This document shows positions 131-62,017 of a stretch of DNA of 64,000 nt, one piece after another (the first letter of the stretch is position 1; the number at the start of each line of letters is the position of its first letter). A program made the translations under genes and the position numbers. This DNA is from Macrostomum lignano (Eukaryota): assembly GCA_002269645.1 (NCBI GenBank), contig NIVC01003372.1, positions 1 to 64,000 on the forward strand, written 5' to 3'. Under the pieces are notes generated by a model, which worked only from the letters and a program-made list of their open reading frames with translations, made no database searches and had not been told where the DNA came from.

Positions 131-1289
131 TCATGCATAATGATGGGGATGGTGAGGTGATGATGAAATACGGAGGCAGAAGTGCACTAAGTCACACATA
201 CATGCAGTGACTAGCCCAAGTAAAGGCTGCTTGCTCTGTAAGTGCGACGCAAGAAACCCCCCCATCCCAAATTTGAGCGTCGTTCCGTCGCACTTCAAGA
301 TTCGTCGGGTTGATAATAGTTTTCGCTGAGTTGTCGTCATGAAGACGAAGTGTCGCCCGTTTGTCTCAGGAACTGTCACATCCTGCAAATGAAACTGGGC
401 AGGTACATGTCTAGGATCAACTTGAAATGTACGTCAACAGGTTCCATAGGGCGATCTTTTTTGCGTCTGTAATTTGCATTGCGACTAATGACTCAATACT
501 AAGCACCTCCTGCACTTCAGGTGAAAATTCTCTTACCTTCTCCTCCGCGATAATTCTAGCAGAGGTAAAACAACATGCGCTTTGCTCCCTCCTTTACCTC
601 CTTTGCTGCCTTTCTCTTCTGAGCTGGCCGATCAACTGGATCGCACGTGTGCGGAGCAAGGGATTCTATGGTTCCATCAGCACGGCGGACTGCGGAGCCA
701 TGACAGTGCAGTGATAAACGCTTAGTGCAGCGATAGTATGTGTTGCCATTTCGCCGCGTTTTTTCATCCATCAGATGGCCAAGGTCTCGTTGGACATACT
801 ACACTAGAAGGTCTTTTCCGTGACTGCATCCTGCACCTGTAAGAATCTCAAAGGGCTGGGGAGGTGGGCTGCGAGGCGTGCAAGCTCTGCTGGAGGAATT
901 TGAATGGATTCTTCCAGAGCTGGATCAGGGTCATTGAAATCTGGATACTGGTAAAGAAAATTTTCTGCTTGTGCCGGAATCAAATGCACTGGTTCTGGAT
1001 TTTCAGCAGGCAGAGGAACAGCCGCTGGTCCAGAATTCGGGGCTTGTACATGTACCTCTGCAGCATCTGCAGCTTGAGACACTGCTAAGTTACCTGCAGG
1101 AGCCCGTCTATTGCATTGATTGCAAAGCCAAAAAAACTCACCGACATTTCTCATTGCAGAATACTCATCGATTGTGACGCAACTATCGCATGCACGGTGC
1201 TGCCAATTCAAGCATTGAGAACACTCAATTGCTTCTTGTCCTTCGCAAACTGGCTGCAGACAGACTACACATGGATATGCGCCTGCCAT
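131..1289 (-). mobile_element. Decayed Mutator-like (MULE) transposase: PHD finger + FLYWCH-type zinc finger + start of DDE domain, frameshifted
   Basis: ORF 804-1289 has a C4HC3 PHD pattern (CVVC..CSQC..HRAC..CNQC). ORF 556-771 has YYRC-x5-C..H-x-C (FLYWCH/WRKY-like). Bases 388-131 read RHFVFMTTTQRKLLSTRRILKCDGT, resembling the RHLIF..Q..LL......DGTF motif of invertebrate MULE transposases. The segments lie in different frames. No TIR was found. Confidence 0.75.
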
Positions 1290-4566: not shown

Positions 4567-4850
4567 GTGAGGGGTTGAGAAAGTTTTCTTGGAAATGGGT
4601 TGATTGAAATTAGTTGCTGACACCAATGAAGTGGGGCGAATTCCACGTTTGAATTGCCGCCGGCGTTGAGTTCACACGAATAATCCGGAAATCGCGCAGA
4701 CGAATCACAACGAAATCCTTTCTCCTGTTTTACTCCAAATGCCGGGTTCTCTAGTCTGGGGGGGAGGGTAGTCGTAATCGTAGCGGAGCAGTCGTGTAGC
4801 GGCGCGGTCGTTCAAATGATGAGACACCGTAAATTTGCTGAGCTTGTTAC
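4567..4850. repeat. Conserved structured core, copy A (truncated)
   Basis: Shares ttgccgccggcgttgagttc..ccggaaatcgcgcagacgaatcacaacg and gagggtagtcgtaatcgtagcggag..gttca..gacaccgtaaa with copies B-G. Similarity stops at ~4850. Confidence 0.85.
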
Positions 4851-5858
4851 CCGTAACGCAAAATTTCGTATCGATACGTATCGGAGACGACCCCCTGAAT
4901 TCCCAAAGTCTCGTCCCAGGGATAGTACTTTTGATAGTTGTAGATACGTATCCGATATGTAATTTTGAGACGTCCTAGGGACGGTCCCAGGTGACTTCTA
5001 TGAGACCTTAATAATGACAATCCACCACAGGCATATTGCTCTTACTTTTTGCACTTTTGAGTTTTGCAATCACGTGACCTGGCTGCTTGACTGAAATGTC
5101 AGACTTTTTTGACAGTTTTGGGGAACTGATACGTTGACAAATAACAAAGGCGAAAGTGAAAAATTAGCAACTGAGAATTTTCACTGAGCAATGCAATTTC
5201 TTTTCTCTTTAAAGAGACGTAGCAAAAAGGTTTTATTGGCCGACCAAGTCGGACTACGTCGGCGAATAAAACGTCAAGCCTGACGGGCAAGCCGGGGGAG
5301 TTATTAGTCGCTCTCTACGTCTGCGTCGTCGTCGATCTGTCTGTCACATTTCGATTTCCGCATCATTCGTTTTAGAATGCTGCCGATAAAAGAACGGGCA
5401 CCGACGCATCCTAACTGACGTCGCAGTGATTTTGAGTCCAGCACGATTCATGAAAAGTTGGATTTTAGATTTTGCCACAACTATACGTCTTTATTTAAAA
5501 AATAAATAACGCAAATTAAGAGACTCACCGATTGCACAGTCGGCCACTGGCGCAGGTAGTTTTTGCTCCCCCCCCCTCTTCGACCTTCCATATTGTATTG
5601 GCACAAAACGGAAGGTTTTGCTGTCAATATCAGCATTTTCAGCATTAGTTTGACAGCATTTTCTGCCCGACTAGCACAATACTTCCTCTACAAGAAGGGT
5701 TACGGCAAATAATTAGTGATTGGTAACAACAGCAAAGCTCCAATTGAGTAACTCACATAATTATTGCCATTTGGGAATTCAGAAGAAAGATATTAGGATA
5801 TGCAAAAATGTTTTCCACAAAATTTAAAGCATTTTATTGAACTATAAAGTTCAAGATT

Positions 5859-7053
5859 GTTTGTTTGTTAAACAAAAGGGTCCTAAGGGGGACCCGCGGA
5901 TCAGCCACATGGAAGGGCTCTGCCGCGACAGGCACTGCCAGGGGCACAGCATTAGCTGTTTTTAGAGCCCGATATACCCCGATTGGGATGGAGATTGGGC
6001 CCGGCATAAAGCACGGGAGGCGAAGTGGACCTAAACCTACGGTACAAGACACCGCCAAACCAACAGTGGAATCAGGGACGGTGCTAAGACCGAGTCCACC
6101 CAGGCCACCCCCCCCCCCAGCAGACAGGTCCTCGGGAGTGCGCGAAAAACAGAATTGGATATACTACTTAAAGCCGTCCAAGAGCGGGGAAACCCAGAAG
6201 TCTTGGAAAGGAGCCGTCCAAGAGCGGGGAAACCCAGAAGTCTTGGAAAGGGCTAACTATTGGAGCGAGTCTGGGAGGCTTGTATCCGAGGGCGAGTCTC
6301 CTATCAAGAGGTAAACCAGAAAACCCTCCTATAGGGCTGCAAGCCACAAGGGCATCGCCTATCCAGCTCATTATTGGGGGGCAGGCCAAGGGGTCGAGAA
6401 GAGGCACCAGGGGCAAGAGGACACCAGACTCAGCCGGTTGTCCCCGGTACGGGACGAACATCCTTCCCAGGACACCAATCCACTGTCAGGATGAGAGCCA
6501 GAGACACGCAAGCAGGGACCGTCAGCAGGAGCCAGTAGATGGACCCAAAAACAGAGCAGGGTGGACCGGGCAGTGGCAGAGCTCATTACTCCGAGAGATT
6601 GGACGGCTACATAGGCCGGGATTTGATAAAACCAATACTGTAATGGGACTAAAACATAACTGGAGGAGCACCTGAAACCACACAGGCCCCCTCAACCTGT
6701 TACCCGGGGCTCAGCCTCAGGGCTGGCAGTCTACTGGGCCTACCGTGCACCTTTGTGAATCGGTCATTTTCTTTCCTGCAGGGCGGGTACGACCGGGGGG
6801 CTCAGTCCCGTCCTAGCCACACTGCAGTCCAGAGTACCTACTCACTCTGGGCACCCCCCCTTAAACCAAGGCCGAGGGCCGAAATTCTATTGGTTAGAAA
6901 AGATAGGGTATATTTTTGAACAGGCACAGCCCCTCCGGGGCGGACCCTTAGTTATTGGGCTAGCCGAAGCCAGGCCAATCGGATTGCGCGCAACCCTTAG
7001 ACAAGCTACCAGAGAGGCAACCAGGGTAAAAACAGTCAGAGACCGTCTTTACG
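5859..7053 (-). mobile_element. 1.2-kb non-coding retroposon with SL-like 5' head, 3' stem-loop and (AAAC)n tail
   Basis: Exact 12-bp TSD AAGTTCAAGATT at 5847-5858 and 7054-7065. The minus-strand 3' end is gggtcc-ccctta-ggaccc followed by ttttgtttaacaaacaaac. The minus-strand 5' end is CGTAAAGACGGTCTCTGACTG. There is an internal 40-bp tandem duplication at 6172-6251 and no recognisable ORF. Confidence 0.8.
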
Positions 7054-8147
7054 AAGTTCAAGATTACCGTAAAATGTATTGTGCATAAATTATAAAATGA
7101 TAAGGGCTACAGGCCTAGTCTGTTTTTATAAATTTGCTTAACTAGCTATTACTATTATTACCTCATTCACAAATATGATTTAACATTTGTGACTAAAGAA
7201 TGTACACTGAAGATACTAAACTAAAGTCATATTATACTGGATAGAATAATCCGCATAACTGTGGCTTCTAATTGATATTGATATGAATATGAATCTGAAT
7301 CAGAGAGTCTGTACGACATACATACGACCGACCCACACGACGTTACAAAAATCAGGGACGGCAAAAATCAGAGAAGGGACGAATTCAGTCCATGGACGGG
7401 AAGAGGAATAGAACTAGCGATGGACGAGAGAAATAAAAAAATCAGCGGATGGGGAACTTTTTAAAAAATTATTTTCGCATGCAGTTATTGTTATAAAGTT
7501 CAGATTTCAACCGTGGCATCCCGCCTGCCACCAATACGTACCTTTTACTTCAACTTGATAAGTTACTGTGACGTTACCAAAAACGTAGCTTTTAAATACT
7601 AAAAAATGTCTGTTTTAAAGTATTAAAATGACTGAATTTGTTTGGCACCATAATAAAAAGTAATTTTAAGTACCTTTTAAACACGAAAAACATATCTGTT
7701 CGTTCGATTTTATTGAAACGTATTTGAGACCTATCTGATGCGTCCGATTGTTATTCGGGTTCAAAGCGAGGGACGGAAACCATGTATAGTTTGATCATAA
7801 GTTTGATTATTTGCATGGGTCTGGGGGCGCAACGAGAGGCAGACGAGAGCTCGCTTTTGATCATCAAAGGTTTGGGCGCCATTGCTACTGGTGTTTCAGT
7901 GTGCGCATTATGTCTCCTTCTTATATTAAATGTGCATGTGCAGTGTCATTCTTCGTTTTATGCGAAATTTTTTCACACATTTACCTACATTATTTTTGTT
8001 TGCTCTGTTTCCTGCATGCTCATTTGCATTTTTACATCTCACACAACCTCATTTTTCTCAATGTGAGAAATATTTCGCATAAAACGAATTTAACTATTTT
8101 AGTTAAGCCAGTAGATTTTTAGTAATTATTAGAGATTTAGTATATTG

Positions 8148-9953: not shown

Positions 9954-10465
9954 TATTTTCAACGTAAAAATTAACATTCTTAATTGGTCGAATCACCTTG
10001 ACTTTCAAAAGATATGTACTGTAAACTGTATTTCTAAATTCAACCTTTTAAGACGTAAGACTTCTAAATTCACTGATTAAGTTAAACAGATCGAAATCCT
10101 TTCGAGTGCATGCTAAATAATTTCGCACTGATTTCTTGCACACGATAAATTATGTTTGGGATTAAGAGCAGAGAAACAAAATATTGTGCTCAAAAACATT
10201 TCCTTTGTCGATTTCTTGTTCTTTTATTTTTGCGAAAGAAATGAAACTGCGTATTTTAAATAAAAAATTTAGTAAAAATCCATTTTTTCTAAAATATTTT
10301 GTCGTTGTCTTCCGTAACAAAGATTAACAAATAGATTGATTTCTTCTCATACTTAAGTTTTCTTGTGGTTTTAGTAGCAGATTCTTATAGAAATTGTCAA
10401 AATAAATTTTTTTGTACGATCATTGGTCCATGTACAAACTTTTTTTCAATAACAAAAAGTTGTGT

Positions 10466-10900
10466 GAGGTGGGGGTGGAGAAGAAATTTGTTGGGCGGCG
10501 TTTGAATTCGGCGGTTTGAATTGTTGGTCGACACCAGTGAGGTGGGGCGGATTCTACGTTTGAATTTCCGCCAGTGTTGTCTCGGCACTCGTTAACCCGG
10601 AAAATTTCACGAATGATGTGTGGATTCTTCTCCTTGGATACTTCGTCTGCCGGGGTCCTCAATTCCGGGGGGAGGGTAGCCGTAATCGTATTCGAGCGGT
10701 CTTGTAGCGGCCCGGTCGTTCAGAATGGGTCCTCAGACACCGTAAAATTCGTAAACTGTCGAAATGCTGTTTTGTTACTGTCAGTAGTAAAGTAGCGCTG
10801 CCACCACCGTAATTTCGTATTACGGAACGATAAGGGTCTCAGAGCTTTCTTTGAGTTGAGACTGATTGGTTATTTTACGCCCCGCGGGCAAATGACTCAA
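10466..10900. repeat. Conserved structured core, copy B
   Basis: Runs gaggtgggggtggagaag ... gccggggtcctcaattccgggggagggtag ... gtagcgctgccaccaccgtaatttcgtattacggaacg ... ttttacgccccgcgggcaaatgactcaa. Confidence 0.9.
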
Positions 10901-11966
10901 TAGAGACTGGGGCTTCGATTAAGAACAACTGAATAAGCAATTATTATTATTGTGAACTAAATATTATCGCTATTATTAAAGTAATAGATAAATTGTTATT
11001 ACTATTGTTGTTAACTATTAAAAGAAAAACCTCGAGAGATGGATTCGGCCGTGCCGAGGGCGAGCTAATAAATTACAAGCGCTTAGTCGAGAAGGCTGTT
11101 CTAGTTAAACGCAAATTAAATATTAACAGCAGACTCGTCAAGTCAGTATTCAAAAGTCAGAGAACAAAAGTAAAGTAAAGAGCAAAGCGAGCAAAGCGCA
11201 TGAGCAAAAGGTTCCAACAACAACGTTGTAAATATTAATTTTGCAAGGATAACCCAGGGGTTAGGACAAAGGATGGGACAAGGGAAAGGACAACGAAGGA
11301 AAATGGGAAAAACTTCAAAGCACTAAAACAACAGAGGCCACGGGAGGGAACAGCGAAAGGAGCAGACGAAGGAGCAAGGGCGGGGACAACCGGGGGAACA
11401 AACATGGGAACAAACATTGAAAGCATGACGTCAACCGTCATCCGATGGAGTCTAGCTGGTCGTCCCGCCGTTGTCCGCGCTGGAGGCCTGCCGTCGTTCA
11501 CCCCAGTGGTAGACCGGCCTAGCACATGTGACCTAGCTTTGAGAACGACCCTACGTCGAATCGTCTAAACTTCTATTTCGAAAATTTCTCCAAATACATT
11601 GCCCTATAATATATTGGCCTAACAGGCTAATTGCCTGAGCCAAATTCTTACTACTACAGGCAGTGGGAAGGAAGTTTACATTAAGAGTAAAAATTTCGAT
11701 GACGTCAGGATGGCGCAAATGCAAATACCGAGTTAGTAATTCCGCACAGTGACATACATCGGGTGGAGCGGAGTCCGGCGGACAAGTAGCGGCCTCGCCT
11801 GCCACACTCTCCTGCTAATATTTCAAAGGCTCGTTTGCCCCCTGCATATGCCACTATGTGACGCGACCCTTCTTTGTTCGGTGCTGACGGCTATGCACTA
11901 TCAATAATAAATTGAGTCTTCGTAACAAGAGAGTCTTATGTTTGAACTTTGACTGATTGTATTTAA

Positions 11967-14183
11967 TATAGCATTTTGCAGCCCATTTGGGCTAACGCGC
12001 TTTTAATTTAATCCAAGATACGTTTGCCAATGTAACAGAGCTTTTGTCTATGGTAGCAAGGCTGGCGCAGTGGCATTTAATTTGGTTCAAAAAGCATCCA
12101 TTTGGTCCAAACACTCGTGAGCCATTTGACAAACTCTTGCCTTCTCTCAACCGTCTGCAGGTTGTTGCGCACCGCTGGAATGTCAGCGTCTCTACCAAAA
12201 ATTTTAAGTTGCTTTGTAGAATTTTCTTTAATTGTTTATTGAATAAGAGCAAGGCGGTGGTTCATTTAGTTATTTACCAACGGAACTTAGATCAAAGAGA
12301 AAACAAGGGGAGAGCGAGTGATTTGTTTCACTGCCGCCGCCGTGTATTTATAGCTTTGTTATTGTCTTCCGGAAATTTCTAGAAAGATTTAGCTAATTTT
12401 AACAAAGCGAAATAACCCTTTAATTATATACATTACGTAAATATAATTAGAACATTAATACTTAAGTGATAATTAATTATTTACTATTTATATGCGTATG
12501 TTATAGATTAGCTGCTAACTCAAAGAAGTTTCTGGAAATAGTTTTTGACTTTTAGAAATCTGAAGAAATTTCGGGAAAGTCATTAAAGTACGCTACAACA
12601 GTTCCCCCCACGGGAGACGGAGTCCCTAAGTATGACGGTTAATTAATGTTAATTAGATGCTGGGTTACCGTGAATAAAGTCCAGGTTGAAATTACGCTGC
12701 TGAAAATTAATACAGATGACGACTGGGTTCACCGCGAGACGGATAGGGGCAGCTGGGCTCGCACTGCGGTCGAGGAGTTCAGACTGATTGTACATTATGG
12801 CGGTTAACAAGTCCGTGGTCTCTGCGGCACTGCTCCAGGATGGCGGTTTGTCGCTGTAGTTTGGAACGACCTGCGGGTTATTGCCGGTTTGCAGACAGAC
12901 GACTCCCGAACTACGGATAGGCGCCAGGGATCAAGGCGGGTAGTCGCTCTGCGGCTGAAACAGAACCGAGAAGATTCATGGGTGTCGTCCGGGTTAGGCC
13001 AGCTGGTTGACCACCGGCTTATCGAGGAACCTCGTAGTAGGTTGCAATGTGTAGACTCGCCAGTGGTGCCAGCCGGTTTATTGTGGATTGCTAATTGAGT
13101 TCTTCGCGATGGATGAGACCCAGTGCTAACGTCGCGTCTGCGCGGTGCTGCGGTTGATGTCGCTGGTACGTATACGTGGAGGTCATACATGTAGCTGCGC
13201 GGATGGCTCGATCGGATGGCCGTTCGTGAGCCCGTGTAGGCGTAGTTTATTTGGTCACCGACGAGATACCGTGTCGTTTTTAGATGTGGGAACAGGGAGG
13301 TTGGCGACGGTTTAGCTAAATTTATATTACATGACGGCGACGGGAGACACGCTGAGAAGTGATGACGCTGGGCAGTAGACAGTGGTGTGCTATGTTTCGG
13401 CGTTGGTAGCGACGGCGGTGCTGATCGCGAATGATGGCATGATGAGCGGTCACGGGCGTGCGTATGCACACGCATTCTGAAAGAGATCGCTCGACGCCTC
13501 ACCGGACCATTGTAGAATTTCTTTAATTGATTATTGAATAAGAGCAAGGCGGTGGTTCATTTAGTTATTTACCAACGGAACTTAGATCAAAGAGAAAACA
13601 AGGGGAGAGCGAGTGATTTGTTTCACTGCCGCCGCCGTGTATTTATAGCTTTGTTATTGTCTTCCGGAAATTTCTAGAAAGATTTAGCTAATTTTAACAA
13701 AGCGAAATAACCCTTTAATTATATACATTACGTAAATATAATTAGAACATTAATACTTAAGTGATAATTAATTATTTACTATTTATATGCGTATGTTATA
13801 GATTAGCTGCTAACTCAAAGAAGTTTCTGGAAATAGTTTTTGACTTTTAGAAATCTGAAGAAATTTCGGGAAAGTCATTAAAGTACGCTACAGCTTTTCC
13901 AGAGCTCTGCTGATAGTCGAAATCTGATAACCTCCTTCGTGTTCACCTCCGTCGAGTGCTTCGATCACAAGCCAATGACATTCGTTCAACAGCCTAGCAT
14001 ATGGTCCACAATTCTGGGACTAAGCTGCAAATGAACTAAATGGACCAAATTGGTGCTTGTTGGACCAAATTAAATGCCGCTGTGCCAGCCTTGCTACCAT
14101 AGACAAAAGCTCCATTACTTTGACAAACATATCTTGGATTAAATTCAATGCGCGTAAGCCCAAATGGGCTGCAAAAAGCTATA
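11967..14183. mobile_element. Element bounded by ~143-bp inverted repeats (MITE/foldback-like), interrupted by an LTR element
   Basis: 11967-12109 is the reverse complement of 14041-14183 at roughly 85% identity by eye (gcagcccatttgggct..cttttgtctatggtagcaaggctgg..catttaatttgg). The element is about 0.53 kb once the nested LTR element is removed. Confidence 0.55.
12215..13892 (-). mobile_element. Young non-autonomous LTR retroelement (TRIM-like), 1.68 kb
   Basis: LTRs at 12215-12597 and 13511-13892 have TGTAG...CTACA ends and differ by only about two changes near one end. 4-bp TSD GCTT at 12211-12214 and 13893-13896. On the minus strand there is a putative PBS TGGTCCGGTGAGG 1 nt inside the 5' LTR, a PPT GGGGGGAA at 12602-12609, TATAAATA in both LTRs and an intact AATAAA in the 3' LTR (12235-12240). 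No gag/pol is recognisable in the 913-bp interior. Confidence 0.88.
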
Positions 14184-14529
14184 GTATTATTTATTTGAAC
14201 AGACCGGATAACCTATTGCCGTTAAATTATTGGTGGTAAGCTATAGCGAACAGGCACCAGGCGGCGGACCAACCAAAAAGCACGCACGAGGCCCAAGAAA
14301 ATTGAGCGCAAAATCGCGATTTAACCGTCTTTTAAATATAACAATACTCGTATGTCTATGAAGGACACAGTAAAACAAATTTTAAGCGTACAATATTGAA
14401 TACTTTAAAATTCGCTTATGAATAGTAAATAAATTAATATAATACTAAAGAGACATATTTAATATCAAATTATTTTTAAAAATTAAATATCAACATCGTT
14501 ACAACTAGGTCCGATTTAGTGATATATAT

Positions 14530-14968
14530 GAGGTGGGGGCGGAGAAAAAAGGGGGGGTGTTGAAAAAAAATTGGAAACTTTGGCGGTGAATTTGGCTGGT
14601 TTGCTGACACAAATGAATTGGGTGATATTAACTTTGAACTGCCGCCGACGTTGAATTCGCACGAATTAAATCCGGAAATATCGCGCAGACGAATCTCAAC
14701 GAAATTTTCTCCTGATACTCCGACTGCCGGGGTCCTCAATTCCGGGGGGAGGGTAGTTTCGGTCGTAGACGAGCGGTTTTTGTTAGGCGCGAGCGTTCAG
14801 AGAGGGTCCTCAGACACCGTAGTTAATGCGCTTCGATTGCTTGACTGATTACTGTTAGTAGAGTAGCGCTGCCACCACCGTAATTTACGTATTACGGAAC
14901 GTTGAAGTCTCAGAGCTTTCTTTGAGATGAGATTGGGTTATTTTACGCCCCACGGGCAAATGACTTAA
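14530..14968. repeat. Conserved structured core, copy C
   Basis: Same ordered motif series as copy B. Confidence 0.9.
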
Positions 14969-15552
14969 AATAGGCTATGGCTTTTGATCCAGAACGTAGA
15001 AGACAAATTATAATTGTTGCTTATTTATTAATCGGTAAACAAAGTTATTATAAACAAGTTATTGTATTCACACTCGAGCAGCGACTAACGATTCAAATGA
15101 CTGGGGTGCCGCGGTGCGGGCTCTCACTTAAACTAAACTTAAGTAACTGTCCGGTTGAGCAAAATTAATAAAAGTTAATTTAACGTTGATTAGCAGAATA
15201 GGGGGGGTCAGAAAGGGAGAAAGGGATCGGAAGGAAAGAAAGGCATGGAAAAGCAGAAGTCTAGGGGAGAGACAGGCGCAAGGGGCGGGGTTAAATACCC
15301 CAAAACGAAGGACACAAGGTGGTCGACATAGCCCAGAAAATGGGGAAGGCGAAAAACTAGAGTCCAGAAAGAGGTAACAAAAAAATACCGCAGAAAATAC
15401 ACAGAAAAACAAAATAACCATAAATTGGGCATACAAAGCCAGAAAATGGGGCGGGGAGAACAGAAAGAGGGCAGAAAACGTCATATATGCGCCAGGGGGT
15501 GGACAAATGGGGGCCAGAAAGGGGCGAGCTTAATTTTAATGTCCAGATAATT

Positions 15553-15978
15553 GAGGTGGGGGTGGAGAAGAATTTTCTTGGAATGGGCGGCTTTGAAAAT
15601 TTGCTGACACCAGTGAGGTGGGGCGGATTCCCGTTTGGATTGCCGCCGGCGTTGAGTTCGCACGAATAAAGCCGGAAAATCGCGCAGACGAATCACAACG
15701 AATTTCTTCTCCTTTTACTCCGACAGCCGGGTCCTCAGGTCCGGGGGAGGGTAGTCGTAATCGTAGCGGAGCGGTCGTATAGCGGCCCGGTCGTTCAGAT
15801 TTGTAGACTCAATGGTCTAGACACCGTAAATCTGTTTCTGAGTTGTTGAGCTGATTACTATCAGTATAGTAGCGCTGCCACCACCGTAATTTCGTATTAC
15901 GGAACGTTGAGACCTCAAAGCTCGTTCGGAGATGAAATGAGTTTGGTTGTTTAACGCCCCACGGGCAAATAACTCAAG
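15553..15978. repeat. Conserved structured core, copy D
   Basis: Same ordered motif series, 1023 bp after the start of C. Confidence 0.9.
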
Positions 15979-16631
15979 ATAAACTGTCAAGGGCTTCGAT
16001 AAATGAACAACTAGTAAATTATTATTAATAATTATTGTTAATTGCGCAAGCGGTAGTTATTAGAGATTAATATTAATTTCACGAGATGTCCACGGCCGGT
16101 GCCGGGTGCCGAACGACTAACTATTAAGCGAAACTATTAAAACTTACTTAGCGGAGGCAAAAACTATAAACACTAAACAGAAACTGTATAAACTCAAACA
16201 CTAATGAACGAGCACAAACCACGGAGTTTACACGAAGAAGAACGACGAATACGGAAAAAAACGCGCGCGCGCGAAAAAACCAAAAGGCGGCCCGAAATGG
16301 CCTTATAAAAGGGGAAACAATGTCGTCCGGACAGGGATGGGGCAACAGATGGGGCAGGAAGGCGAAGGATGGGGCAGACGATGGGGCAGCGGACGACACT
16401 AAAGCCGCAAACGGGAATTAACAAAAAAATTGAGCAACGGCAAAAGATGGGGCGAGGGATCGGGCGAGGGATCGGGCAAGGGACGGCGCACCGAGTGACG
16501 GAAAAACAGAGAGTCATGAGCAAGTGTCACCACACGGCGCCATCACGTTCGTCGGTCAGTGGTAGATCGCCCTACCACATAATGTTATTGTTATTAAAAT
16601 CAATTTTTGAAAAATAATCAGTGGTGATACT

Positions 16632-17041
16632 GAGGTGGGGGTGGAGAAGAATGAAAAAATTTGAAAGTTGGTGGGTTTGAAATGTTGGGTTTCTTCGAAA
16701 ACCCGAACGGCATTGAGTTCGCACGAATTAACTCCGGAAAATCGCGCAGACGAATCTCAACGAATTTCTTCTCCTTTTACTCCGACTGCCGGGTTCTCAA
16801 GTCCGGGGGAGGGTAGTCGTAATCGTAGCGGAGCGGTCGTGTAGCGGCGCGGTCGTTCAAAGCGATGAAACACCGGAGGTTGTTGACACCGTAAATTAAT
16901 GTGTCGATTTGCTGAGCTTGTTGCTTTCAATAGGGTAGTTGCTGCCACCACCGTAATTTACGTATTACGGAACGAGTAAGTCTCAGAGCTTTCTTTGAGA
17001 TGAGAACTTGGTTATTTTACGCCCCACGGGCAATGACTCAA
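16632..17041. repeat. Conserved structured core, copy E
   Basis: Same ordered motif series, 1079 bp after the start of D. Confidence 0.9.
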
Positions 17042-17602
17042 GAGAGACTAAGGCTTAAAGTTAACGGAAAAATAAATAGAATTATTAAGTTGCAGTTTAC
17101 TTCGGTTATTATTATTGTTAAATTTGCAGGCTGAATAACTGACGAGGTTTCTCCACGGGTGCCGGAGGCACAGGCTATTAAAAGAAAAACTGTAACTTGG
17201 CGACTAAACTACTCACGCACCAATGAATTTTAACTATTCACGCAAAATAACTATTAAACGCAAGGCTGTTAAGACGGAGGATCAAGCTAAGAGAATAATA
17301 GTAAAAGCGGAAAAGGGAGGGAAGAAGAAGGGGAAAGAGGAAAGGCATGCAAAAAAACGCGCTGAGCACAATGTTTAAGTAGTACGTTGAGAAGGGCAGC
17401 GAGAGGAGAAAAGGTGACAAGGGCAGGACACCGGGCATGGACCAGACAGAAAAGCACAGGGACAAATGGGGAGAAAACGCAAAAACATCGACAAGACAAA
17501 CAGGGCCAAGGACAGGAGAGGGAGAACTCACACCGGAGGTTGGAAGAAATGACGACAAAAATCCCGGGTTTGGAGGGGGGCGGGTAAAATCCCGGGGATG
17601 TT

Positions 17603-18009
17603 GAGGTGGGGGTGGAGAAGATAAAACAAAATTTGATATTGGAGGTCGGCCGGTAATTCTTCGAAACCGGTAGCGTTGCGTTCGCACGAATAAAAACCGG
17701 AAAATCGCGCAGACGAATCACAACGAAATTCTTCCCCTTTTACTCCGACTGCCGGGTTCTCAAGTCCGGGGAGAGGGTAGTTGTAATCGTAGCGGAGCGG
17801 TCGTAGAGCGGCACGGTCGTTCAGTTGTAGGAACTCCGGAGTTTCTGCCTCCGTGAATTAATGCGTCGAAGTGTTGAACTCGTTACTTTTAGTAGGGTAG
17901 TTGCTGCCACCACCGTAATTTACGTATTACGGAACGTTTAATGGTCTCAGAGCTTTCTTTAAGTTGAGACTGATTGGTTATTTTACGCCCCACGGGCAAA
18001 GGATTCAAG
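17603..18009. repeat. Conserved structured core, copy F
   Basis: Same ordered motif series, 971 bp after the start of E. Confidence 0.9.
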
Positions 18010-18606
18010 ATAGGCTATGGCTTATATTAACTGGATAGGTATTAACTGATTAATTGACCGTCTGTTTATTATTAACGCAAAGAAAGTTACTAATTCAAGC
18101 AGGTTATTATTGTTAAGAAAAATTAAGCTACAGACGAAAATGAGTTCGTGGACGCCGGTGCGCTAATAAACTAAGGATGAATTAAACTGTAACTGAAACA
18201 CACGAAAACACAAGCGCGAGCGAGAACAATGGAAACTAAAACAAAAATGGAAGACGAAAAACGGGGGAAGGTAAAGATTAAGAAATTCAACCGAAAACAC
18301 ACTTATTTATACAATGAAATTATTAAATTCCCAGGTGTGGGGCCACGACTTATCAACACCGGGGCCACACACGGGTCCACACTCAGGTTATAAAACAAAA
18401 GCCGCAAAAATACACACAAAATTATTAAAACTCAACCAATGAAAATTATATTGACCAACTAAGGAAAAATCTATAACAACCAATGGTCCAAACACGGGGC
18501 CAACCGGGGGGAAAAGGGTGAGGTCACCGTCTGCCGTTGGCCGCAAGGGTTGGAAACTTACGAAAAGATGGCACGCAATTAAAAATAGAAAAATTATTAA
18601 AATATT

Positions 18607-19036
18607 GAGGTGGGGGCGATTTAGATTTGCGGGTGGTCGTTGGGAGAATATCTGTCCGGTGTTCGTCTGTTTGGAAGTCGAGTGTTTGCGGCTCAGGCCT
18701 TCGAATTGGCGCCGTCGTTATCTCGCACGAATTGAATCCGGAAAATTGGTGAACGAATCCCAATAGAACGACTTGTAGTTGCTCCGTCTGCCGGGGTCCT
18801 CAATCCCGGGGGGGGGGGTAGTTTAGTCGTAGGCGAGCGGTCTGTGCTTGGCGCGAGCGTTCAGATGCGGGTCCTCAGACACCGTAAACTCAATGTACCT
18901 CGTATTCTTGTTGTGTTACTAACAGTAGAGTAGCGCTGCCACCACCGTAATTTGCGTATTTCGGAACGTTGATAGTCTCAGAGCTTGCTTCGAGATGAGA
19001 CTGGGTTATTTTACGCCCCACGGGCAAATGACTCAA
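18607..19036. repeat. Conserved structured core, copy G
   Basis: Same ordered motif series, 1004 bp after the start of F. The left half is more diverged. Confidence 0.9.
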
Positions 19037-20685
19037 GATAAGCTATGGTCTTGATTAATTAACGATAATTAATTGGCTTATTAAGTAATTGAAACGGATG
19101 ACAACTAACTAAATTATTATTATTTTATTTAAACGACGATTGATGAAGGCAGGTGGTGCCGCGAGAGCGATTACAAATAATCAGTTATTAATGAGATTAG
19201 TTACTATCAATATAGGCTAAAGAGTATAAGGTTGATAAAGCAGATTGAACTCGGATTAAAACAGTAACTAAACGGAGTAAAACAAAAACGGAGTAACAAA
19301 CAGGAGTGAAATTCTAGCACCCCCCTGCGCAATATTTATAGTATTTTAATGGTACATAATCTTGGCATTAACGAACAGAAAAAGAGAAACTTTAAATTTC
19401 ACTGGACCATGAGGTCATAAATATGTACCAAAGAAAAATTACATTGGGAAAATGGGCAAAAATTAAAGAGCACAAAAAAGGGCACAAAGGCCAGAACCAG
19501 GGGACCCAGGGCCAGAACCGGGGAGCGGGAGATGACGGAAGGGGTGACGTAGGGCAGCACCATAAGGTGGACATAGGAGGGCCAGACCCGGAACACGACA
19601 AAATTACGACCAGAAACGGGGAAGATTACATTTTCAAAAGTTCAAGTGGGAGGCTCACCCTACCACAATATTATTAAATGGTGGCAACCCCACTGCCACA
19701 ATGTTACGTAAATTTCAGTTAATGTTTTCCACCGATCAGTGGCATCCCACTGCCACAATACCATCTACCACCGCATATAATTAATAATAATGTATAATTA
19801 TTTAAATAGGGCCTACCTTGCTTTCAGACAATGTTTTCAATTAATCTCTTTTGAATAAATTAAACATAAAGGCTAAAGCATGAATTTGCATTGAATAGAG
19901 TTTTAAATACATAGACCTTGGCCCTAGGTCTAGTATCATTTCATTAAAGCAAATTATTATTAAATCATTAAAGCATTCCTTCTGGCCATAGACATCATTT
20001 TCTGGCGTGTCATCACATTGACTGATTGATGTACCATTTAAAACTCGAAAATAATATTGCAAAACAAACTGGAAGATCGCCAGAAAAAATTATATGGTTT
20101 ATATTAAATAGTAGATAATCATAATTTGTAGCAAAATAATAAATGTCTAGGATAGGAATAGCTAATTATATAAAAGCCTATTGTAAAATTATATTAATTA
20201 TAGTATTTGCTCTGGTAAATTAATGTAATGAAGATAAAGACTATTTGTTGTCTCTGTACGTTATCTCTACGTAATAATAATTTTGGTCACTCTTTCAAGT
20301 TTCAATGATATTGACTTCAAGACAAAATATTGAATGCTTTAATAATATTTTTGATACAGTATTTTCTAAAAGTAACATAAGCCTAGTGGTTTATTTATAT
20401 TTATTAGTAGGCCTAAAATAGAGTCAAATGCATTCAATTTATAAAATTAGAATATTTTGCTTTTTAAAAAACAAAAAAATTATACATTACTAATGCCTTG
20501 AAATAAGATAAATATAGGGCCTAGAATCAAATTGTTATTTTTTATTTCCTTATTATAAAATTGAAAGCTTTCTTTAAATGTACATATTTTCTTTTTGATT
20601 TAGAATTGAAGGTTGGTTGATTTTGTAACTAGATTAGCTAAGTGCTTGTATATAAAAATATTAATATGTATTTCTATTTCCATAT

Positions 20686-35220: not shown

Positions 35221-35260
35221 GTCAAGTTTCTGTTTTGTAAAATTGAACACGTAAAAATGC

Positions 35261-38200
35261 ATGCTCGCCCCCAAGGCAATGTCCGAAGCAGACGATAACA
35301 ACGTCGATTTCGACACCCAACTTCGCCTGGAACGCGAGGAAGCCGCCGCAAAAGATGCTGCCAATGGCGTCTCGAACCAACGGACGAATGATAATGAGGC
35401 CAATAAAAAAACCCGAACTGACGAGGACGGCACCGTGTTCGATTGGGACGAGGACAAACAGGCTTGGTTTCCTAGAATCGACTCGGAAATGCTCATTCGC
35501 TATCAGCTTGGCTACGGCACCTCTGAGCAGCAGCAACAGCAGCCGATTGGAGGTCCGGAGTTCGACTCCCTGCCGCCGGAGGAGCAAGAGAAGGCTAGGG
35601 AATATTGGGAGCAGTATTATAATTCCCAGGAGTACAGGGACTGGTACGCTCGGTACAGTGATTCAGCGACTACTGCCGCAACTGCTGGGCAAGGTATGGG
35701 ATTTTATTTGAGCTATTTTTATCCCCAATTGTTTGTTAGAGTGTGTAGTACATTGTGATCCCAGTTTGGGATCTATAACACATTTTCATCCCAGTTCGGG
35801 ATCTATAACACAGTTTGATCCCAGTTTGGGATCTATAACACATTCTAATCCCAGTTTTGGATCTATAACATATTCTAATCCCAGTTTTGGATCTATAACA
35901 CATTCTAATCCTAGTTTGGGATCTAAAACACATTCTAATCCTAGTTTGGGATCTATAACATATTCTAATCCCAGTTTTGGATCTATAACACATTCTAATC
36001 CTAGTTTGGGATCTAAAACACATTCTAATCCTAGTTTGGGATCAAAAACACATTGTGATCCCAGTTTGGGATCTATAAAACATTTTGATCCCAGTTTGGG
36101 ATCTATAACACATTTTGATCCCAGTTTGGGATCTATAAAACATTTTGATCCCAGTTTGGGATCTATAACACATTCTAATATCCCAGTTTGAGATCCATCA
36201 CACTTTTGATCCCAGTGTAAGATCTACAGCACTTTTTATCCTAGTATGTGATTTATAACACTTTTGATCCCAGTTTGGGATCTATACTACATCGGGATCC
36301 CTTTAGTGCCTGAGTTCCAATTCCAAACAAATAATTTCCCCCTTAAACCCTTATTAAAACCCCTGCAGACGGTGAGTCTTCAACGGCAAGCCAGCAGCAG
36401 CAGCAGCAGAGCAGGAAACGCGAATTGAAAAAGAAGAAGCCAGACCAGCAGCAGCAGCAATGGTTCGAGGTGCCGCCAGACCAGAACACGCACGTTTTCG
36501 TGCAGAACCTGCCGCTAGACCTGACCGAGCCGGAGTTCATCGAGTTCATGTCCAAGTGCGGCATGGTGCTGCACGACCCGCTGACGCGCCGGCCGAAGGT
36601 CAAGCTGTACACGGACGAAGATGGCAATTTTAACGGCAGCGCCAGGTGCGGCTACATCAAGAAGGAGTCGGTGGCGCTGGCCCTGCAGATTCTGGACGGC
36701 TACCGGCTGCGAGACTGCGAGATCAGCGTGGAGCCGGCCAAGTTCCAGCCCAAGGAGGGGTTCGACCCCAGCAAGCGGAGGAAGCTCACTAATAAGGAGA
36801 AGAAGAAGGTGAGGGAGTCGGGTGTCGGGTTAAAAGGAATAGGGAGCTTTGTTCACTGGGAAGGGGAATTGGGAAGGATGGGGAGAATGCAGATTAGGGA
36901 ATTACGGGGTGAATTCAAATGGGGAATTTTAGGGAGAATTTAGATTGGGGAATTTAGGGGAGAATTCAGATTAGGAAATTGTATGGAAAGAATTCAGATT
37001 ATAAAAATATGGGGAGAGTTCATATTGGGGAATTATGGGAAGAATTCATATTGTGAAATCATGGGGAGAATTCAGATTGGGAAATCATGAGAAGAATTCA
37101 GATTGAGAAATTATGGAAGAGAATTCAGATTTGGGAATCATGGGGAGAATTCAGATTGGGGAATCATGAGGAGAATTCAGATTGGGGAATCATAAAAATA
37201 ATTCAGATTGAGAAATTATGGAAGAGAATTCAGATTTGGGAATCATGGGAAGAATTCAGATTGGGGAATCATGGGGAGAATTCAGATTGGGGAATCATGA
37301 GAATTCAGATTGGGGAATCATGAGGAGAATTCAGATTGGGGAATTATGAGAGAGAAATTATGAGAGAGAATCCAGTTTCGGAAATTATGGAAAAGAATTC
37401 AGATTGGGGAATCATGAGGAGAATTCAGATTGGGGAATCATGAGGAGAATTCAGATTGGGGAATCATGAGGAGAATTCAGATTGGGGAATTATGAGAGAG
37501 AAATTATGAGAGAGAATCCAGTTTCGGAAATTATGGAAAAGAATTCAGATTGGGGAATCATGAGGAGAATTCAGATTGGGGAATCATGAGGAGAATTCAG
37601 ATTGGGGAATCATGAGGAGAATTCAGATTGGGGAATTATGAGAGAGAATCCAGTTTCGGAAATTATGGAAAAGAATTCAGATTGGGGAATCATGAGGAGA
37701 ATTAAGATTGGGGAATAATGGGGAAGAATCTAGATTGGGGACTTATGGAAGAGAATTTCGACTAGATTAGGGATTAGGGAGAATTCAGATTAGGAAAATC
37801 CAGACTCGCTCCAACAGGTCGCATTACCGGCCCGCTACCAAACCCGCAGGTGAAAGAGCAGCAAACCCGCCTGTTGGCCTGGGCGCCCGCCGATTCCGCC
37901 GCCTCAGCAGACGGCGGCCTTGGCGTCAGCGCCGGCGCGAACGCCGCCCGACGCTCCGACCGGGTTTTGGTGATTTCCAACGTGTTTGACCCGTCCGAAT
38001 TCGACTCGGATCCGCTGCTGTTGGAGAAAATCCGCGACGATGTTGTGACCCGCTGCGCCCAGTACGGCCCGGTGCGCAAGGCCGTGGTGCACGATCGCAA
38101 CCCCGACGGCGTCGTGCTGGTCACCTTCGCCGAGTCCGGCCAGTGCAGCCTGGCTCTCAGCCAGCTCGATGGTCGGATGTTCCGCGCCGGCCGGGTGCTC

Positions 38201-38641
38201 AAAGCCGCCATCTGGGACGGCCGGACCAAGTACCACGTGGAGGAGACGGAGGAGCAGGCTGCCAGGCGACGGGCCATCTGGGAGCGGCAGATTCTTGGCG
38301 AAGATTGTCGACAGATTGGCCTCCCGACTACTGAGAGGCCGCTTGAAGGTCAGCCTGAAGGTCATCCTGGAGGTCAGCCTGAAGGTCATCCTAAAGGGCA
38401 ACCTGAAGGTCATCCTGAAGGTCATCCTAAAGGGCAACCTGAAGGTCATCCTGAAGGTCATCCTAAAGGGCAACCTGAAGGTCATCCTGAAGGTCATCCT
38501 GAAGGTCATCCTAAAGGGCAACCTGAAGCTCATCCTGGAGGCCATCCTGGAGGTCAACCTGAAGGTCAACCTGAAGTCGAAGCTGAATCAACCACAGACG
38601 AAGAAGAGCCAATAGCTTCGTCGTCAGATGACGATAATTAA
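35261..38641 (+). CDS. HTATSF1: HIV Tat-specific factor 1 / Cus2 homolog (U2 snRNP factor; RRM + UHM), 3 exons
   Basis: join(35261 or 35279..35693,36369..36808,37850..38641) with compatible phases. Motifs: WDEDKQAWFPRID..YQLGYG; RRM NTHVFVQNLPLD..KVKLYTD..YIKKESVALALQILDG..VEPAKFQPK; UHM VISNVFDP..DRNPDGVVLVTF..LDGRMF..AIWDGRTKY..EETEE. Confidence 0.95.
35750..36300. repeat. Intronic minisatellite, 30-bp unit with a hairpin
   Basis: (gatcccagtttgggatctataacacatttt)n. GATCCC-agttt-GGGATC is self-complementary. HTATSF1 intron 1. Confidence 0.95.
36930..37795. repeat. Intronic minisatellite, ~26-bp unit
   Basis: (gagaattcagattggggaatcatgag)n, HTATSF1 intron 2. Confidence 0.95.
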
Positions 38642-50330: not shown

Positions 50331-51184
50331 TTCTATCTATGGGGTGATATTTTGTCTAGGAAGGCTTAGATTCTCAGGATGAGATTCTCAGGGGTGAGAC
50401 TTCTAGATGAATTATCCCGTTTTGCATGCCCACCAGTCTGTTGGTATCCCCAGCTACTTTTGTCGGCAAGGGGCAAAGCAGTCTGCACAGATCTGCAGTG
50501 AGTTATGATGCACAGCCGCCCTTTTCATTCAATCCCAGATCGTCATTGCTTTTTTGTACAGAGTTATACTATATCAGATTTAGTAAATTGCCTATATACA
50601 CATCTACACCGCGTCTTTGTGTACCGCATGGGCGCAGCGGGTGGTATCAGGGGATATCACCCCCCCCCACTGGCTTCTTGTCCTTGGGCTGCCTTAACAA
50701 TACTGCAAGTTGGTCGTGTCTCGTTTTATTGGTTAGCTATGGGTACAAAGACCACCGACAACTGTGGCTTGCACGTGGCCGCATATCTCCCCAACAGGGA
50801 TATTGTGTGGGAGGGGAAGGCCGCCCTGTCAGGTCTGGCGTCACCTGCTGTCATTCCGTTAAAAATCCCCTCCTGTAAGAAAGATGGGAACAGGATATCG
50901 GCGACCCCATAACAGACAGGATATCTTACAGATTCATAGAAGGCCAACAAAAACAGTAAAACAGGGGGTGGTGGCCGCCAACCACCAATCCAAGGGCACC
51001 TGTTGAATTCTGTAATGCTCTGAGTGCCCGACTGTCTGCTTTCGTCTATGTTCCATTATTTGTAGGGCCACTGCTTCAGGACACGCGCGTAATGGATCAA
51101 TCACAGATAGACACTTGCCGCGGAGGCCCGGCCTGCATGCACGATCTGTATGTTGGGGTTGTGTATCACTTAGTCTATTCCCCA

Positions 51185-57595: not shown

Positions 57596-62017
<4,422 letters not shown>

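What the first reader, a model, noticed from the sequence alone, without database searches (positions are those of the whole stretch)
5859..7053. Retroposon whose 5' end is the start of the spliced leader
Seen: a 1195-bp insert with an exact 12-bp TSD, a 3' stem-loop and an (AAAC)n tail, which are hallmarks of target-primed reverse transcription. Its first 21 nt on the minus strand, flush against the TSD, are CGTAAAGACGGTCTCTGACTG. From memory, not looked up: the M. lignano SL begins CCGTAAAGACGGTCTCTTACTG and continues CGAAGACTCAATTTATTGCATG. That gives a 20/21 match followed by abrupt divergence, so this is not a normally trans-spliced mRNA, which would carry the whole leader ending in ATG. 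Established: NeSL, SLACS, CZAR and CRE retrotransposons target SL RNA genes, and SINE heads derive from small RNAs. Inference: this is either an SL-RNA-derived SINE or a non-autonomous element whose master copy sits inside an SL RNA gene and is transcribed from the SL promoter. I know of no described flatworm family of either kind.
Basis: partly seen in the sequence, partly recalled or inferred. Interest (0 to 1): 0.8.

Follow-up and report, generated by a model that had tools for sequence, protein, structure and literature searches.

The report
Retrocopy capped by a spliced-leader fragment
A 1.2-kb non-coding DNA copy of an RNA, inserted by LINE-type reverse transcription in a Macrostomum flatworm genome, starts with the first 21 bases of the worm's spliced leader. 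With only one copy in hand, it is best read as a reverse-transcriptase template-switch product, not yet as a new spliced-leader-derived SINE family.

Summary
Window 5859-7053 is a 1195-bp, GC-rich (56% vs 38.5%) insert flanked by an exact 12-bp duplication. Its sense strand is the minus strand. It ends in a stem-loop plus a short AAAC repeat. It starts with CGTAAAGACGGTCTCTGACTG, a 20/21 match to the published Macrostomum spliced leader (SL), starting at the leader's own first bases.

The window is M. lignano or a very close relative.

Nothing after base 21 resembles the rest of the SL or the SL RNA. The insert has no RT/EN ORF and is not inside an SL gene.

New finding: the SL/body junction sits at the top of a 12-bp hairpin. 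SL bases 2-13 form one arm, and the first non-SL bases (TTTTTAC) pair with SL GTAAAGA (chance about 8e-4).

My preferred reading is a structure-guided template switch or skip by the reverse transcriptase onto or within an SL-bearing RNA, either in this event or in an ancestor.

Precedents exist: partial leaders next to LINE/LTR elements in parasitic flatworms, SINEU, and U6-L1 chimeras.

Interest is moderate. A genome-wide BLAST would settle one-off versus family.

The parts
5847..5858 (.). Left copy of the target-site duplication AAGTTCAAGATT
   Evidence: Read directly; identical to 7054-7065
5859..7053 (-). The whole insert: a 1195-bp non-coding retrocopy whose sense strand is the minus strand
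   Evidence: GC 56% vs 38.5% in flanks, with sharp steps. No ORF over 150 aa on the sense strand. ORF pieces of 45 aa or more from all six frames have no protein relative. No Rfam family matches. No other copy in the window.
5859..5877 (-). 3' terminus UUUUGUUUAACAAACAAAC: a short AAAC repeat (about 2.75 units) that can also fold as a 7-bp A/U hairpin
5878..5895 (-). 3' stem-loop GGGTCC/CCCTTA/GGACCC
   Evidence: Unique in the window even with 3 mismatches allowed; predicted in the fold of the last 60 nt, z = -2.6
6172..6251 (.). Exact 40-bp tandem duplication inside the body
   Evidence: TRF: period 40, 2.0 copies, 100% match
6954..7053 (-). First 100 nt of the RNA: four consecutive hairpins
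   Evidence: MFE -39.4 kcal/mol, z = -3.96, 1 of 200 shuffles as good
7026..7053 (-). 5'-terminal 12-bp hairpin. The arms are nt 2-13 (SL) and nt 17-28 (GACTG + TTTTTAC); the loop is TCT; two pairs are G.U.
   Evidence: MFE -13.2 kcal/mol, z = -3.4, 0 of 200 shuffles as good; also seen
7033..7053 (-). SL-derived head: CGTAAAGACGGTCTCTGACTG, which is SL nt 2-22 with one change (T to G)
   Evidence: Matches the published SLs and the SL RNA gene in L001. The 15-mer is unique in the window.
7054..7065 (.). Right copy of the target-site duplication AAGTTCAAGATT

Best explanation
This is a young retrocopy made by a LINE's target-primed reverse transcription. The template was a non-coding RNA of about 1.17 kb with a LINE-type 3' end (stem-loop plus short AAAC repeat).

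The first 21 bases come from the worm's spliced leader. They were joined to the body when the reverse transcriptase, near the 5' end of its template, switched to an SL sequence and ran to that RNA's cap-proximal end. The switch was guided by base pairing: the body's GACUGUUUUUAC is complementary to SL GUAAAGACGGUC, and ACUG is shared at the junction.

The SL-bearing acceptor could have been a separate molecule (SL RNA or any trans-spliced mRNA). Or it could have been the same molecule: an element transcript that had received a whole SL by trans-splicing, with the enzyme skipping the loop of the long-range hairpin and so deleting the SL 3' half.

Shown: the TPRT-type anatomy, the SL identity, the abrupt end of similarity, and the hairpin.

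Inferred: the switch itself, whether it was in cis or in trans, and whether it happened in this insertion or in an ancestor whose descendants form a family.
For: TPRT anatomy:
- Exact 12-bp TSD, sharp composition step, and a 3' stem-loop with short repeat tail. By inspection there are no terminal inverted or long terminal repeats.

SL origin:
- 20/21 identity to the published SL, starting at the leader's own first bases.
- The window is M. lignano or very close: its HTATSF1-like exons are identical in every in-frame block to M. lignano A0A1I8FK20.
- A second SL relic lies at 11906-11937.

Similarity ends at nt 21:
- No similarity to the SL 3' half or to the SL RNA intron part.

Junction geometry:
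- It lies at the top of a 12-bp hairpin (-13.2 kcal/mol, z = -3.4).
- The 7 non-SL bases that extend the helix have a chance probability of about 8e-4, given the element's base composition (my calculation).
- The only SL mismatch (T17 to G) lies 4 nt from the junction, next to the shared ACTG. That fits a microhomology junction.

Precedent:
- Partial leaders next to LINE/LTR elements in flatworms, attributed to trans-spliced retrotransposon RNAs (PMC12582326).
- Recurrent 5' addition of U1/U2 pieces to retroposons, and snRNA chimeric retrocopies (PMC4494074).
Against: - Only one copy is available, so the event cannot be placed in time, and a template switch leaves no unique signature.
- Classical U6-L1 type chimeras carry the whole small RNA. 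Here only 21 of about 109 nt are present.
- The hairpin and the loop-closing T-to-G change could equally be the product of selection in a replicating family.
- No partner LINE with the same 3' end was seen. ORFs of 90 aa or more in 1-22 kb have no RT/EN domain; no RT-like motif was seen by eye in the other ORF translations.
- A body of 1.17 kb with no coding trace is long for a 5'-truncated LINE. This hints at a dedicated non-autonomous element, whose normal 5' end is unknown.
Confidence: 0.5

Rival explanations
1. An SL-headed retroposon family. A non-autonomous, LINE-mobilised family whose full-length members all begin with SL nt 2-22 built into a conserved 5' hairpin. The head is inherited and kept by selection, for example as an initiator element or a protein-binding mimic of the SL RNA 5' end. 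However the head first arose, this copy is an ordinary member.
For: - The 5' end coincides with the SL RNA start.
- The head is embedded in a strong hairpin. The single SL change closes the loop, and two G.U pairs make sense only on the RNA sense strand.
- The first 100 nt form four hairpins, z = -3.96.
- The 3' end is LINE-type, and the non-coding body is too long for a typical truncated LINE.
- The copy is young: exact TSD and exact 40-bp duplication.
- Meeting it in a random 64-kb window is more likely if there are many copies.
Against: - There is no second copy or fragment in 64 kb.
- No spurious protein from any copy appears among 5.8 billion predicted proteins, a set that does hold M. 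lignano ML2 gene models.
- SL and snRNA genes use upstream promoters, so 21 nt are unlikely to make copies self-transcribing (PMC4494074).
- The papers I checked on the M. lignano genome, its LTR retrotransposons and flatworm SL RNA genes do not mention such a family.
Confidence: 0.3
2. A master copy inside an SL RNA gene. The element (or its autonomous relative) once inserted between SL nt 22 and 23 of one SL RNA gene, as SLACS/CZAR/CRE and NeSL-1 do in other phyla. It is transcribed from the SL promoter, so every transcript starts with the first 21-22 SL bases. A non-site-specific LINE then copies those transcripts to other sites in trans.
For: - The SL piece starts at the SL RNA start and stops abruptly.
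- SL exons are known targets of site-specific non-LTR elements (PMC4640811).
- A source of this kind would provide the promoter that a retrocopy lacks.
Against: - This copy is not in an SL gene. Its flanks and TSD are AT-rich unique DNA.
- The element has no RT/EN ORF.
- Under this model the complementarity of the first body bases to the SL 5' end (about 8e-4) and the mismatch next to the junction are both coincidences.
- Ustyantsev and Berezikov describe eight 109-bp SL RNA gene copies and mention no interrupted one (PMC8629364).
Confidence: 0.12
3. A classical SL-RNA-derived SINE. The head is a diverged copy of the whole SL RNA, carries its own promoter, and is followed by a body and a LINE tail.
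For: The three-part layout (small-RNA-like head, body, LINE-like tail) and the structured first 100 nt.
Against: - Beyond nt 21 there is no similarity to the SL RNA (p = 0.6-0.86).
- There is no GTAAG donor and no Sm-like site of the kind seen in L001.
- No tRNA-like head and no Rfam match.
- The T5 run at nt 22-26 would stop Pol III.
- It is 1195 bp long.
Confidence: 0.04
4. A chance resemblance or an artefact: the 21 bases are not SL-derived, or the block is not an insertion.
For: Isolated 12-mer direct repeats are common by chance.
Against: - A 20/21 match placed exactly at the block's edge has an expectation of about 2e-6 per window.
- The exact 15-mer is unique in the window.
- The composition step coincides with both repeat copies.
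Confidence: 0.01

Closest known systems
Partial spliced-leader sequences next to LINE/LTR elements in parasitic flatworms (597 loci set aside in PMC12582326)
   Same: Same phylum. A fragment of the leader is the only SL RNA feature present, and it is physically joined to a retroelement. The authors attribute it to integration of retrotransposon RNAs that carried an SL.
   Different: Those loci were filtered out, not dissected. Which part of the leader they hold, their TSDs and their junctions are not described. Here the retained part is the 5' half, the junction is at a hairpin, and the host is a free-living macrostomid.
SINEU (crocodilian retroposons with U1/U2 snRNA-derived heads; PMC4494074)
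   Same: The 5' piece comes from a Pol II small nuclear RNA gene that has no known internal promoter. There are T-runs inside and a LINE-type tail. 5' additions of snRNA sequence recur, and how the elements are transcribed is an open question.
   Different: SINEU heads cover much of the snRNA, the elements are under 500 bp, and they are documented as families with subfamilies. Here only 21 nt are small-RNA-derived, the element is 1.2 kb, and only one copy is known.
U6-L1 and other snRNA/LINE chimeric retrocopies made by template switching (from established knowledge; discussed in PMC4494074 and PMC4476161)
   Same: One TSD encloses a chimera whose 5' part starts at the small RNA's own 5' end and whose 3' part carries the LINE-recognised 3' end.
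   Different: U6 is usually complete to its 3' end. Here the switch landed inside the SL at nt 21/22, and it appears to be structure-guided.
SLACS / CZAR / CRE (trypanosomatids) and NeSL-1 (nematodes): SL-exon-specific non-LTR retrotransposons
   Same: They give a retroelement RNA that can begin with the first bases of the SL, because the element sits inside an SL gene (PMC4640811; details from my own knowledge).
   Different: Those are autonomous, encode RT and a restriction-like endonuclease, and are found only in SL genes. This insert has no ORF and lies in unrelated AT-rich DNA.
SL relics in dinoflagellate retrogenes (my own knowledge, not looked up here)
   Same: Genomic retrocopies of SL-bearing RNAs that keep only part of the leader.
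   Different: The relics keep the 3' part of the leader, because re-trans-splicing removes the 5' part. Here the 5' part is kept.

Membership tests
Non-LTR (TPRT) retrocopy | Target-site duplication of about 7-20 bp enclosing the whole insert | tested here: met
   Exact 12-bp AAGTTCAAGATT at both edges, coincident with the GC step
Non-LTR (TPRT) retrocopy | A 3' end with poly(A) or short tandem repeats, often preceded by a stem-loop; no terminal inverted or long terminal repeats | tested here: met
   GGGTCC/GGACCC stem-loop plus AACAAACAAAC. The two ends share no inverted or direct repeat (by inspection). The tail is short (2.75 units).
SINE with a small-RNA-derived head (tRNA/7SL/5S; SINEU) | Head homologous to a small RNA over most of that RNA's length | tested here: not met
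   Only nt 1-21 match. The rest versus SL RNA gives p = 0.29-0.86 against shuffles. No tRNA and no Rfam family.
SINE with a small-RNA-derived head (tRNA/7SL/5S; SINEU) | Short (under about 600 bp), with Pol III-compatible internal promoter | tested here: not met
   1195 bp; T5 run at nt 22-26; no A/B-box-bearing tRNA-like head
SINE with a small-RNA-derived head (tRNA/7SL/5S; SINEU) | Many dispersed copies sharing the head, and a partner LINE sharing the tail | not testable with these tools
   No other copy in the window. No RT/EN domain in ORFs of 90 aa or more in 1-22 kb. The M. lignano genome is absent from every searchable collection.
SL-gene-specific LINEs (SLACS/CZAR/CRE/NeSL-1) | Encodes RT and an endonuclease | tested here: not met
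   No long ORF. ORF pieces of 45 aa or more from all six frames have no relative among 5.8 billion proteins.
SL-gene-specific LINEs (SLACS/CZAR/CRE/NeSL-1) | Inserted in an SL RNA gene, flanked by SL gene sequence on both sides | tested here: not met
   The upstream flank is AATCTTGAACTT and the downstream flank is the same TSD. The SL 3' half is absent from the locus.
Template-switch chimeric retrocopy (U6-L1 type) | The 5' part begins at the small RNA's native 5' end, and one TSD encloses both parts | tested here: met
   Starts at SL nt 2, which is the first base of the M. hystrix SL as assembled; single TSD
Template-switch chimeric retrocopy (U6-L1 type) | The small RNA part extends to that RNA's 3' end | tested here: not met
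   Only 21 of about 109 nt of the SL RNA (or of the 44-nt SL) are present
Template-switch chimeric retrocopy (U6-L1 type) | The 3' part is a 5'-truncated LINE or another retrotransposable RNA known on its own | tested here: inconclusive
   The 3' end is LINE-like, but the body has no coding similarity and no SL-less copy is available for comparison
Retrocopy of a normally trans-spliced RNA | Complete SL ending in ...TTGCATG directly joined to the body | tested here: not met
   The SL stops at nt 22. This remains compatible only if the reverse transcriptase skipped the hairpin loop.
SL RNA gene or pseudogene | SL exon followed by a GTAAG donor, hairpins and an Sm-like site (as in L001 616-725 and PMC8629364) | tested here: not met
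   None of these features follows the 21-nt head

The most novel reading that the evidence does not exclude
M. lignano carries an active family of about 1.2-kb non-coding retroposons. Every full-length member starts with SL nt 2-22 folded into a conserved 5' hairpin. The leader fragment would work as a Pol II initiator/promoter element or as a mimic of the SL RNA 5' end. That would make it the first SL-headed retroposon family and a natural reporter of what the first 20 nt of an SL RNA gene do.
Probability: 0.25. Interest if true: 0.7.

Novelty: new member of a known kind. Interest (0 to 1): 0.42.

Why it matters
If this is a one-off, it is a clean, datable example of a reverse transcriptase joining a spliced leader to another RNA at a hairpin. 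It gives a concrete mechanism for the many 'partial leader next to LINE/LTR' loci that flatworm SL surveys currently discard. It also warns that SL-seeded searches for SL RNA genes and trans-spliced 5' ends can be misled by such copies.

If instead it is a family, it would extend small-RNA-headed retroposons (tRNA, 7SL, 5S, U1/U2) to the SL RNA. It would also bear on the open question of how Pol II snRNA-headed retroposons are transcribed, in an animal where transgenic reporter tests are feasible.

Tried and rejected
1. Rfam, on the whole window at gathering thresholds and on the locus at E up to 10. Only two meaningless sub-threshold hits; no ribozyme, snRNA, rRNA or SL family. ARAGORN found no tRNA.
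2. Coding potential. All ORF pieces of 45 aa or more from six frames were joined and searched against 5.8 billion proteins: no hit. Exact look-ups of the 149-aa ORF and of a 427-aa window ORF found nothing on record.
3. Other copies. BLASTN of the insert against the window found only itself. The 3' stem-loop and tail motifs are unique. An apparent 'LLFNKQ' tail motif at 12.2 and 13.5 kb turned out to use different codons and is not the tail. Scans of viral contigs and of prokaryotic genomes were empty.
4. The single metagenome scan went to the SL head pattern. It returned a genuine SL RNA gene (L001), not an element copy.
5. Empty-site test through a neighbouring gene. The PHD-finger ORF 4.6 kb away has no relative in the protein collection. 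The HTATSF1-like gene has only a contig-less M. lignano UniRef entry. No paralogous locus could be fetched.
6. A diverged whole SL RNA in the head was rejected by shuffle tests. A 22/30 match between the SL RNA intron part and the antisense strand (about window 6046-6076) rests on a 9-mer that is expected by chance. I discarded it.
7. DNA transposon or LTR element was rejected: no terminal repeats, and a 12-bp TSD.
8. Whole-element RNA structure is only weakly above shuffles (z = -1.8 sense, -0.96 antisense). Only the two ends are clearly structured.
9. Partner LINE in the window. Joined ORFs of 90 aa or more from 1-22 kb gave no Pfam RT/EN domain. Joining ORFs lowers sensitivity: the weak PHD hit was lost.
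10. Literature. Full-text searches that combined 'spliced leader' with SINE, retrotransposition and template switching listed no SL-derived SINE among their top 20 results (the first attempt failed on a syntax error). Term searches of the M. lignano genome paper and the LTR-retrotransposon paper found no mention of SINEs, non-LTR elements or the spliced leader. A search for Macrostomum with SINE/LINE/transposable-element terms returned no relevant paper.

Full report
**Observation**

Window 5859-7053 is a 1195-bp block flanked by the exact 12-bp direct repeat AAGTTCAAGATT (5847-5858 and 7054-7065). The block has 56% GC against 38.5% in the flanks. In 50-bp bins the change is abrupt at both repeat copies: 0.22 to 0.52, and 0.50 to 0.22.

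Read on the minus strand, the block starts CGTAAAGACGGTCTCTGACTG directly after the repeat. It ends GGGTCCCCCTTAGGACCC-TTTTGTTTAACAAACAAAC directly before the other copy. The 6-bp stem-loop is predicted by folding. The 'AAAC tail' is real but short, about 2.75 units, and it can also form a 7-bp A/U hairpin.

A 12-mer direct repeat on its own is weak evidence. About six such pairs per 22 kb arise in composition-preserving shuffles. The case rests on three things coinciding: the repeat, the composition step, and the two specialised ends.

**The leader and the species**

- M. lignano: CCGTAAAGACGGTCTCTTACTGCGAAGACTCAATTTATTGCATG (PMC5173321).
- The 35-nt form used elsewhere starts at CGGTCTCT (PMC8629364).
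- M. cliftonense and M. hystrix have the same leader, assembled from GCCGTAAAG and CGTAAAG respectively (PMC10468722, Table S3).

The insert's first 21 bases therefore match SL nt 2-22 at 20 of 21 positions, starting where the M. hystrix leader starts. I estimate about 2e-6 such matches per window by chance. The exact 15-mer is unique in the window.

A scan of metagenome contigs with the head pattern returned one contig, L001. It holds a genuine Macrostomum-type SL RNA gene: the SL at 616-659, a GTAAG donor, two further hairpins and an AUUUUUAG Sm-like site. This fits the published description of the 109-bp gene.

The window is M. lignano or a very close relative. Its HTATSF1-like exons are identical, block by block, to M. 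lignano UniRef A0A1I8FK20. That gene model is interrupted by frameshift-like stretches. The window also contains a second, degraded SL relic.

**What the insert is**

It is non-coding. No sense-strand ORF exceeds about 106 codons. ORF pieces of 45 aa or more from all six frames have no relative among 5.8 billion proteins. It matches no Rfam family and no tRNA. It has no terminal inverted or long terminal repeats. It carries one exact 40-bp tandem duplication.

Its anatomy is that of a non-LTR, target-primed retrocopy with a 'stringent'-type LINE 3' end. The exact TSD and the exact internal duplication suggest a young insertion.

**What it is not**

Aligned to the real SL RNA gene, similarity stops at nt 21. 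The following 60-200 nt score no better than shuffles against the SL 3' half or the intron part (p = 0.29-0.86).

So the head is not a diverged SL RNA. With a T5 run at nt 22-26 and a length of 1.2 kb, the element fails the defining features of a small-RNA-headed SINE. It also lacks an RT/EN ORF and does not lie in an SL gene, so it is not a SLACS/NeSL-type element.

No second copy exists in the window. No RT/EN domain was found in ORFs of 90 aa or more in 1-22 kb. None of the reachable collections contains the M. lignano genome. Whether this is a family could therefore not be tested.

**New observation**

The SL/body junction sits at the top of a 12-bp hairpin.
- nt 2-13 (GUAAAGACGGUC, all SL) pair with nt 17-28 (GACUGUUUUUAC).
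- The fold is -13.2 kcal/mol, z = -3.4, and none of 200 shuffles does as well.
- The 3' arm is GACUG (SL-like, carrying the only mismatch, T17 to G, which closes the 3-nt loop) followed by UUUUUAC. These are the first non-SL bases, and they pair with SL GUAAAGA.
- From the element's base composition, seven bases extending the helix by chance has a probability of about 8e-4.
- The first 100 nt form four hairpins (z = -3.96).
- The element as a whole is only weakly structured (z = -1.8).

**Mechanism**

The geometry is what a structure-guided template switch by the reverse transcriptase would leave. Two versions give the same product:
- In trans: the enzyme finishes the body's 5' end and continues on an SL sequence held next to it by base pairing (SL RNA or any trans-spliced mRNA).
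- In cis: the element RNA had received a whole SL by trans-splicing, and the enzyme skipped the loop of the long-range hairpin. That deletes the SL 3' half.

The shared ACTG and the adjacent mismatch fit a microhomology junction. I prefer this explanation, at about 0.5, and leave open whether it happened in this event or in an ancestor.

Rivals:
- An inherited, selected SL-hairpin head of a real family (about 0.3). This overlaps with the best explanation, which leaves a family open.
- A master copy inside an SL RNA gene, read from the SL promoter (about 0.12). Under this model the hairpin is a coincidence.
- A classical SL-RNA-derived SINE (about 0.04). Contradicted.
- Chance (about 0.01).

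**Comparison with what is known**

A 2025 survey of parasitic flatworms set aside 597 candidate loci where partial leader sequences lie next to LINE/LTR elements. The authors ascribed them to retrotransposon RNAs that had been trans-spliced (PMC12582326).

SINEU retroposons show recurrent 5' addition of U1/U2 snRNA pieces and an unsolved transcription mechanism. The same paper sets out how to tell a family from independent chimeric retrocopies (PMC4494074).

SL-exon-specific LINEs are established (PMC4640811).

Against this background, the present case is a new member of a known kind: a retrocopy with a small-nuclear-RNA-derived 5' addition. Two particular points stand out. The donor is the SL and only its 5' half is kept. 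The junction is at a hairpin.

**Verdict**

Interest is moderate (0.42). It would rise to about 0.7 if a genome-wide search shows many independent insertions sharing the same head.

Noticed in passing
window 11906-11937 (-): A second SL-derived piece: AAGAC--TCTCTTGTTACGAAGACTCAATTTATT. It matches the SL in 29 of 34 aligned columns, including an exact 17-mer of the SL 3' half. No GTAAG donor follows and I found no TSD. It is probably an old relic of an SL-bearing retrocopy or an SL pseudogene.
   Followed up: partly
window 7067-7074 (+): CCGTAAAA, an inverted near-copy of the SL start, lies in the flank 13 nt beyond the element's SL head. I estimate a 1-2% chance. No mechanism is assigned.
   Followed up: no
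window 11964-14186: A composite repeat. 392-bp direct repeats (12214-12605 and 13510-13900, 98.7% identical, 1296 bp apart) are bracketed by 146-bp inverted repeats (11964-12109 and 14041-14186, 89%). It looks like a small terminal-repeat element or a recent duplication inside a foldback element.
   Followed up: no
window 14600-19090; also 4571-4836 and 10465-10949: A repeat family of about 1 kb period, with five tandem units of 72-87% identity and two dispersed partial copies on either side of the insert. No Pfam domain in its ORFs.
   Followed up: partly
window 22253-63997: More than twenty different minisatellite arrays (periods 12-40 bp, up to 226 copies at 51171-55886) fill the space between and within genes. 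This matches the high tandem-repeat content reported for M. lignano.
   Followed up: no
window 35255-38638 (+): An HTATSF1-like gene with two RRM exons. It is identical in blocks to M. lignano UniRef A0A1I8FK20, whose published model seems to carry frameshift errors. Its last exon encodes a 12-bp-period PEGH/PKGQ repeat.
   Followed up: partly
window 556-1289 (-): A PHD-finger-like ORF (161 aa, below the Pfam cut-off) followed by a Cys/His-rich 71-aa ORF. The 161-aa ORF has no relative at all among 5.8 billion proteins.
   Followed up: partly
window 60364-61647 (+): A 427-aa ORF with a weak Vestigial/Tondu motif (below cut-off). Its N-terminus is encoded by a 33-bp tandem repeat ([11 protein letters not shown], 5 copies).
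   Followed up: no
L001 601-725 (metagenome contig Ga0302322_100095745): A complete Macrostomum-type SL RNA gene in an environmental metagenome. A partial duplicate of its start (GCCGTAAA) lies 14 nt upstream, and an intron-less Na/K-ATPase beta-like ORF lies 1.1 kb downstream. So a Macrostomum relative was sampled there.
   Followed up: partly
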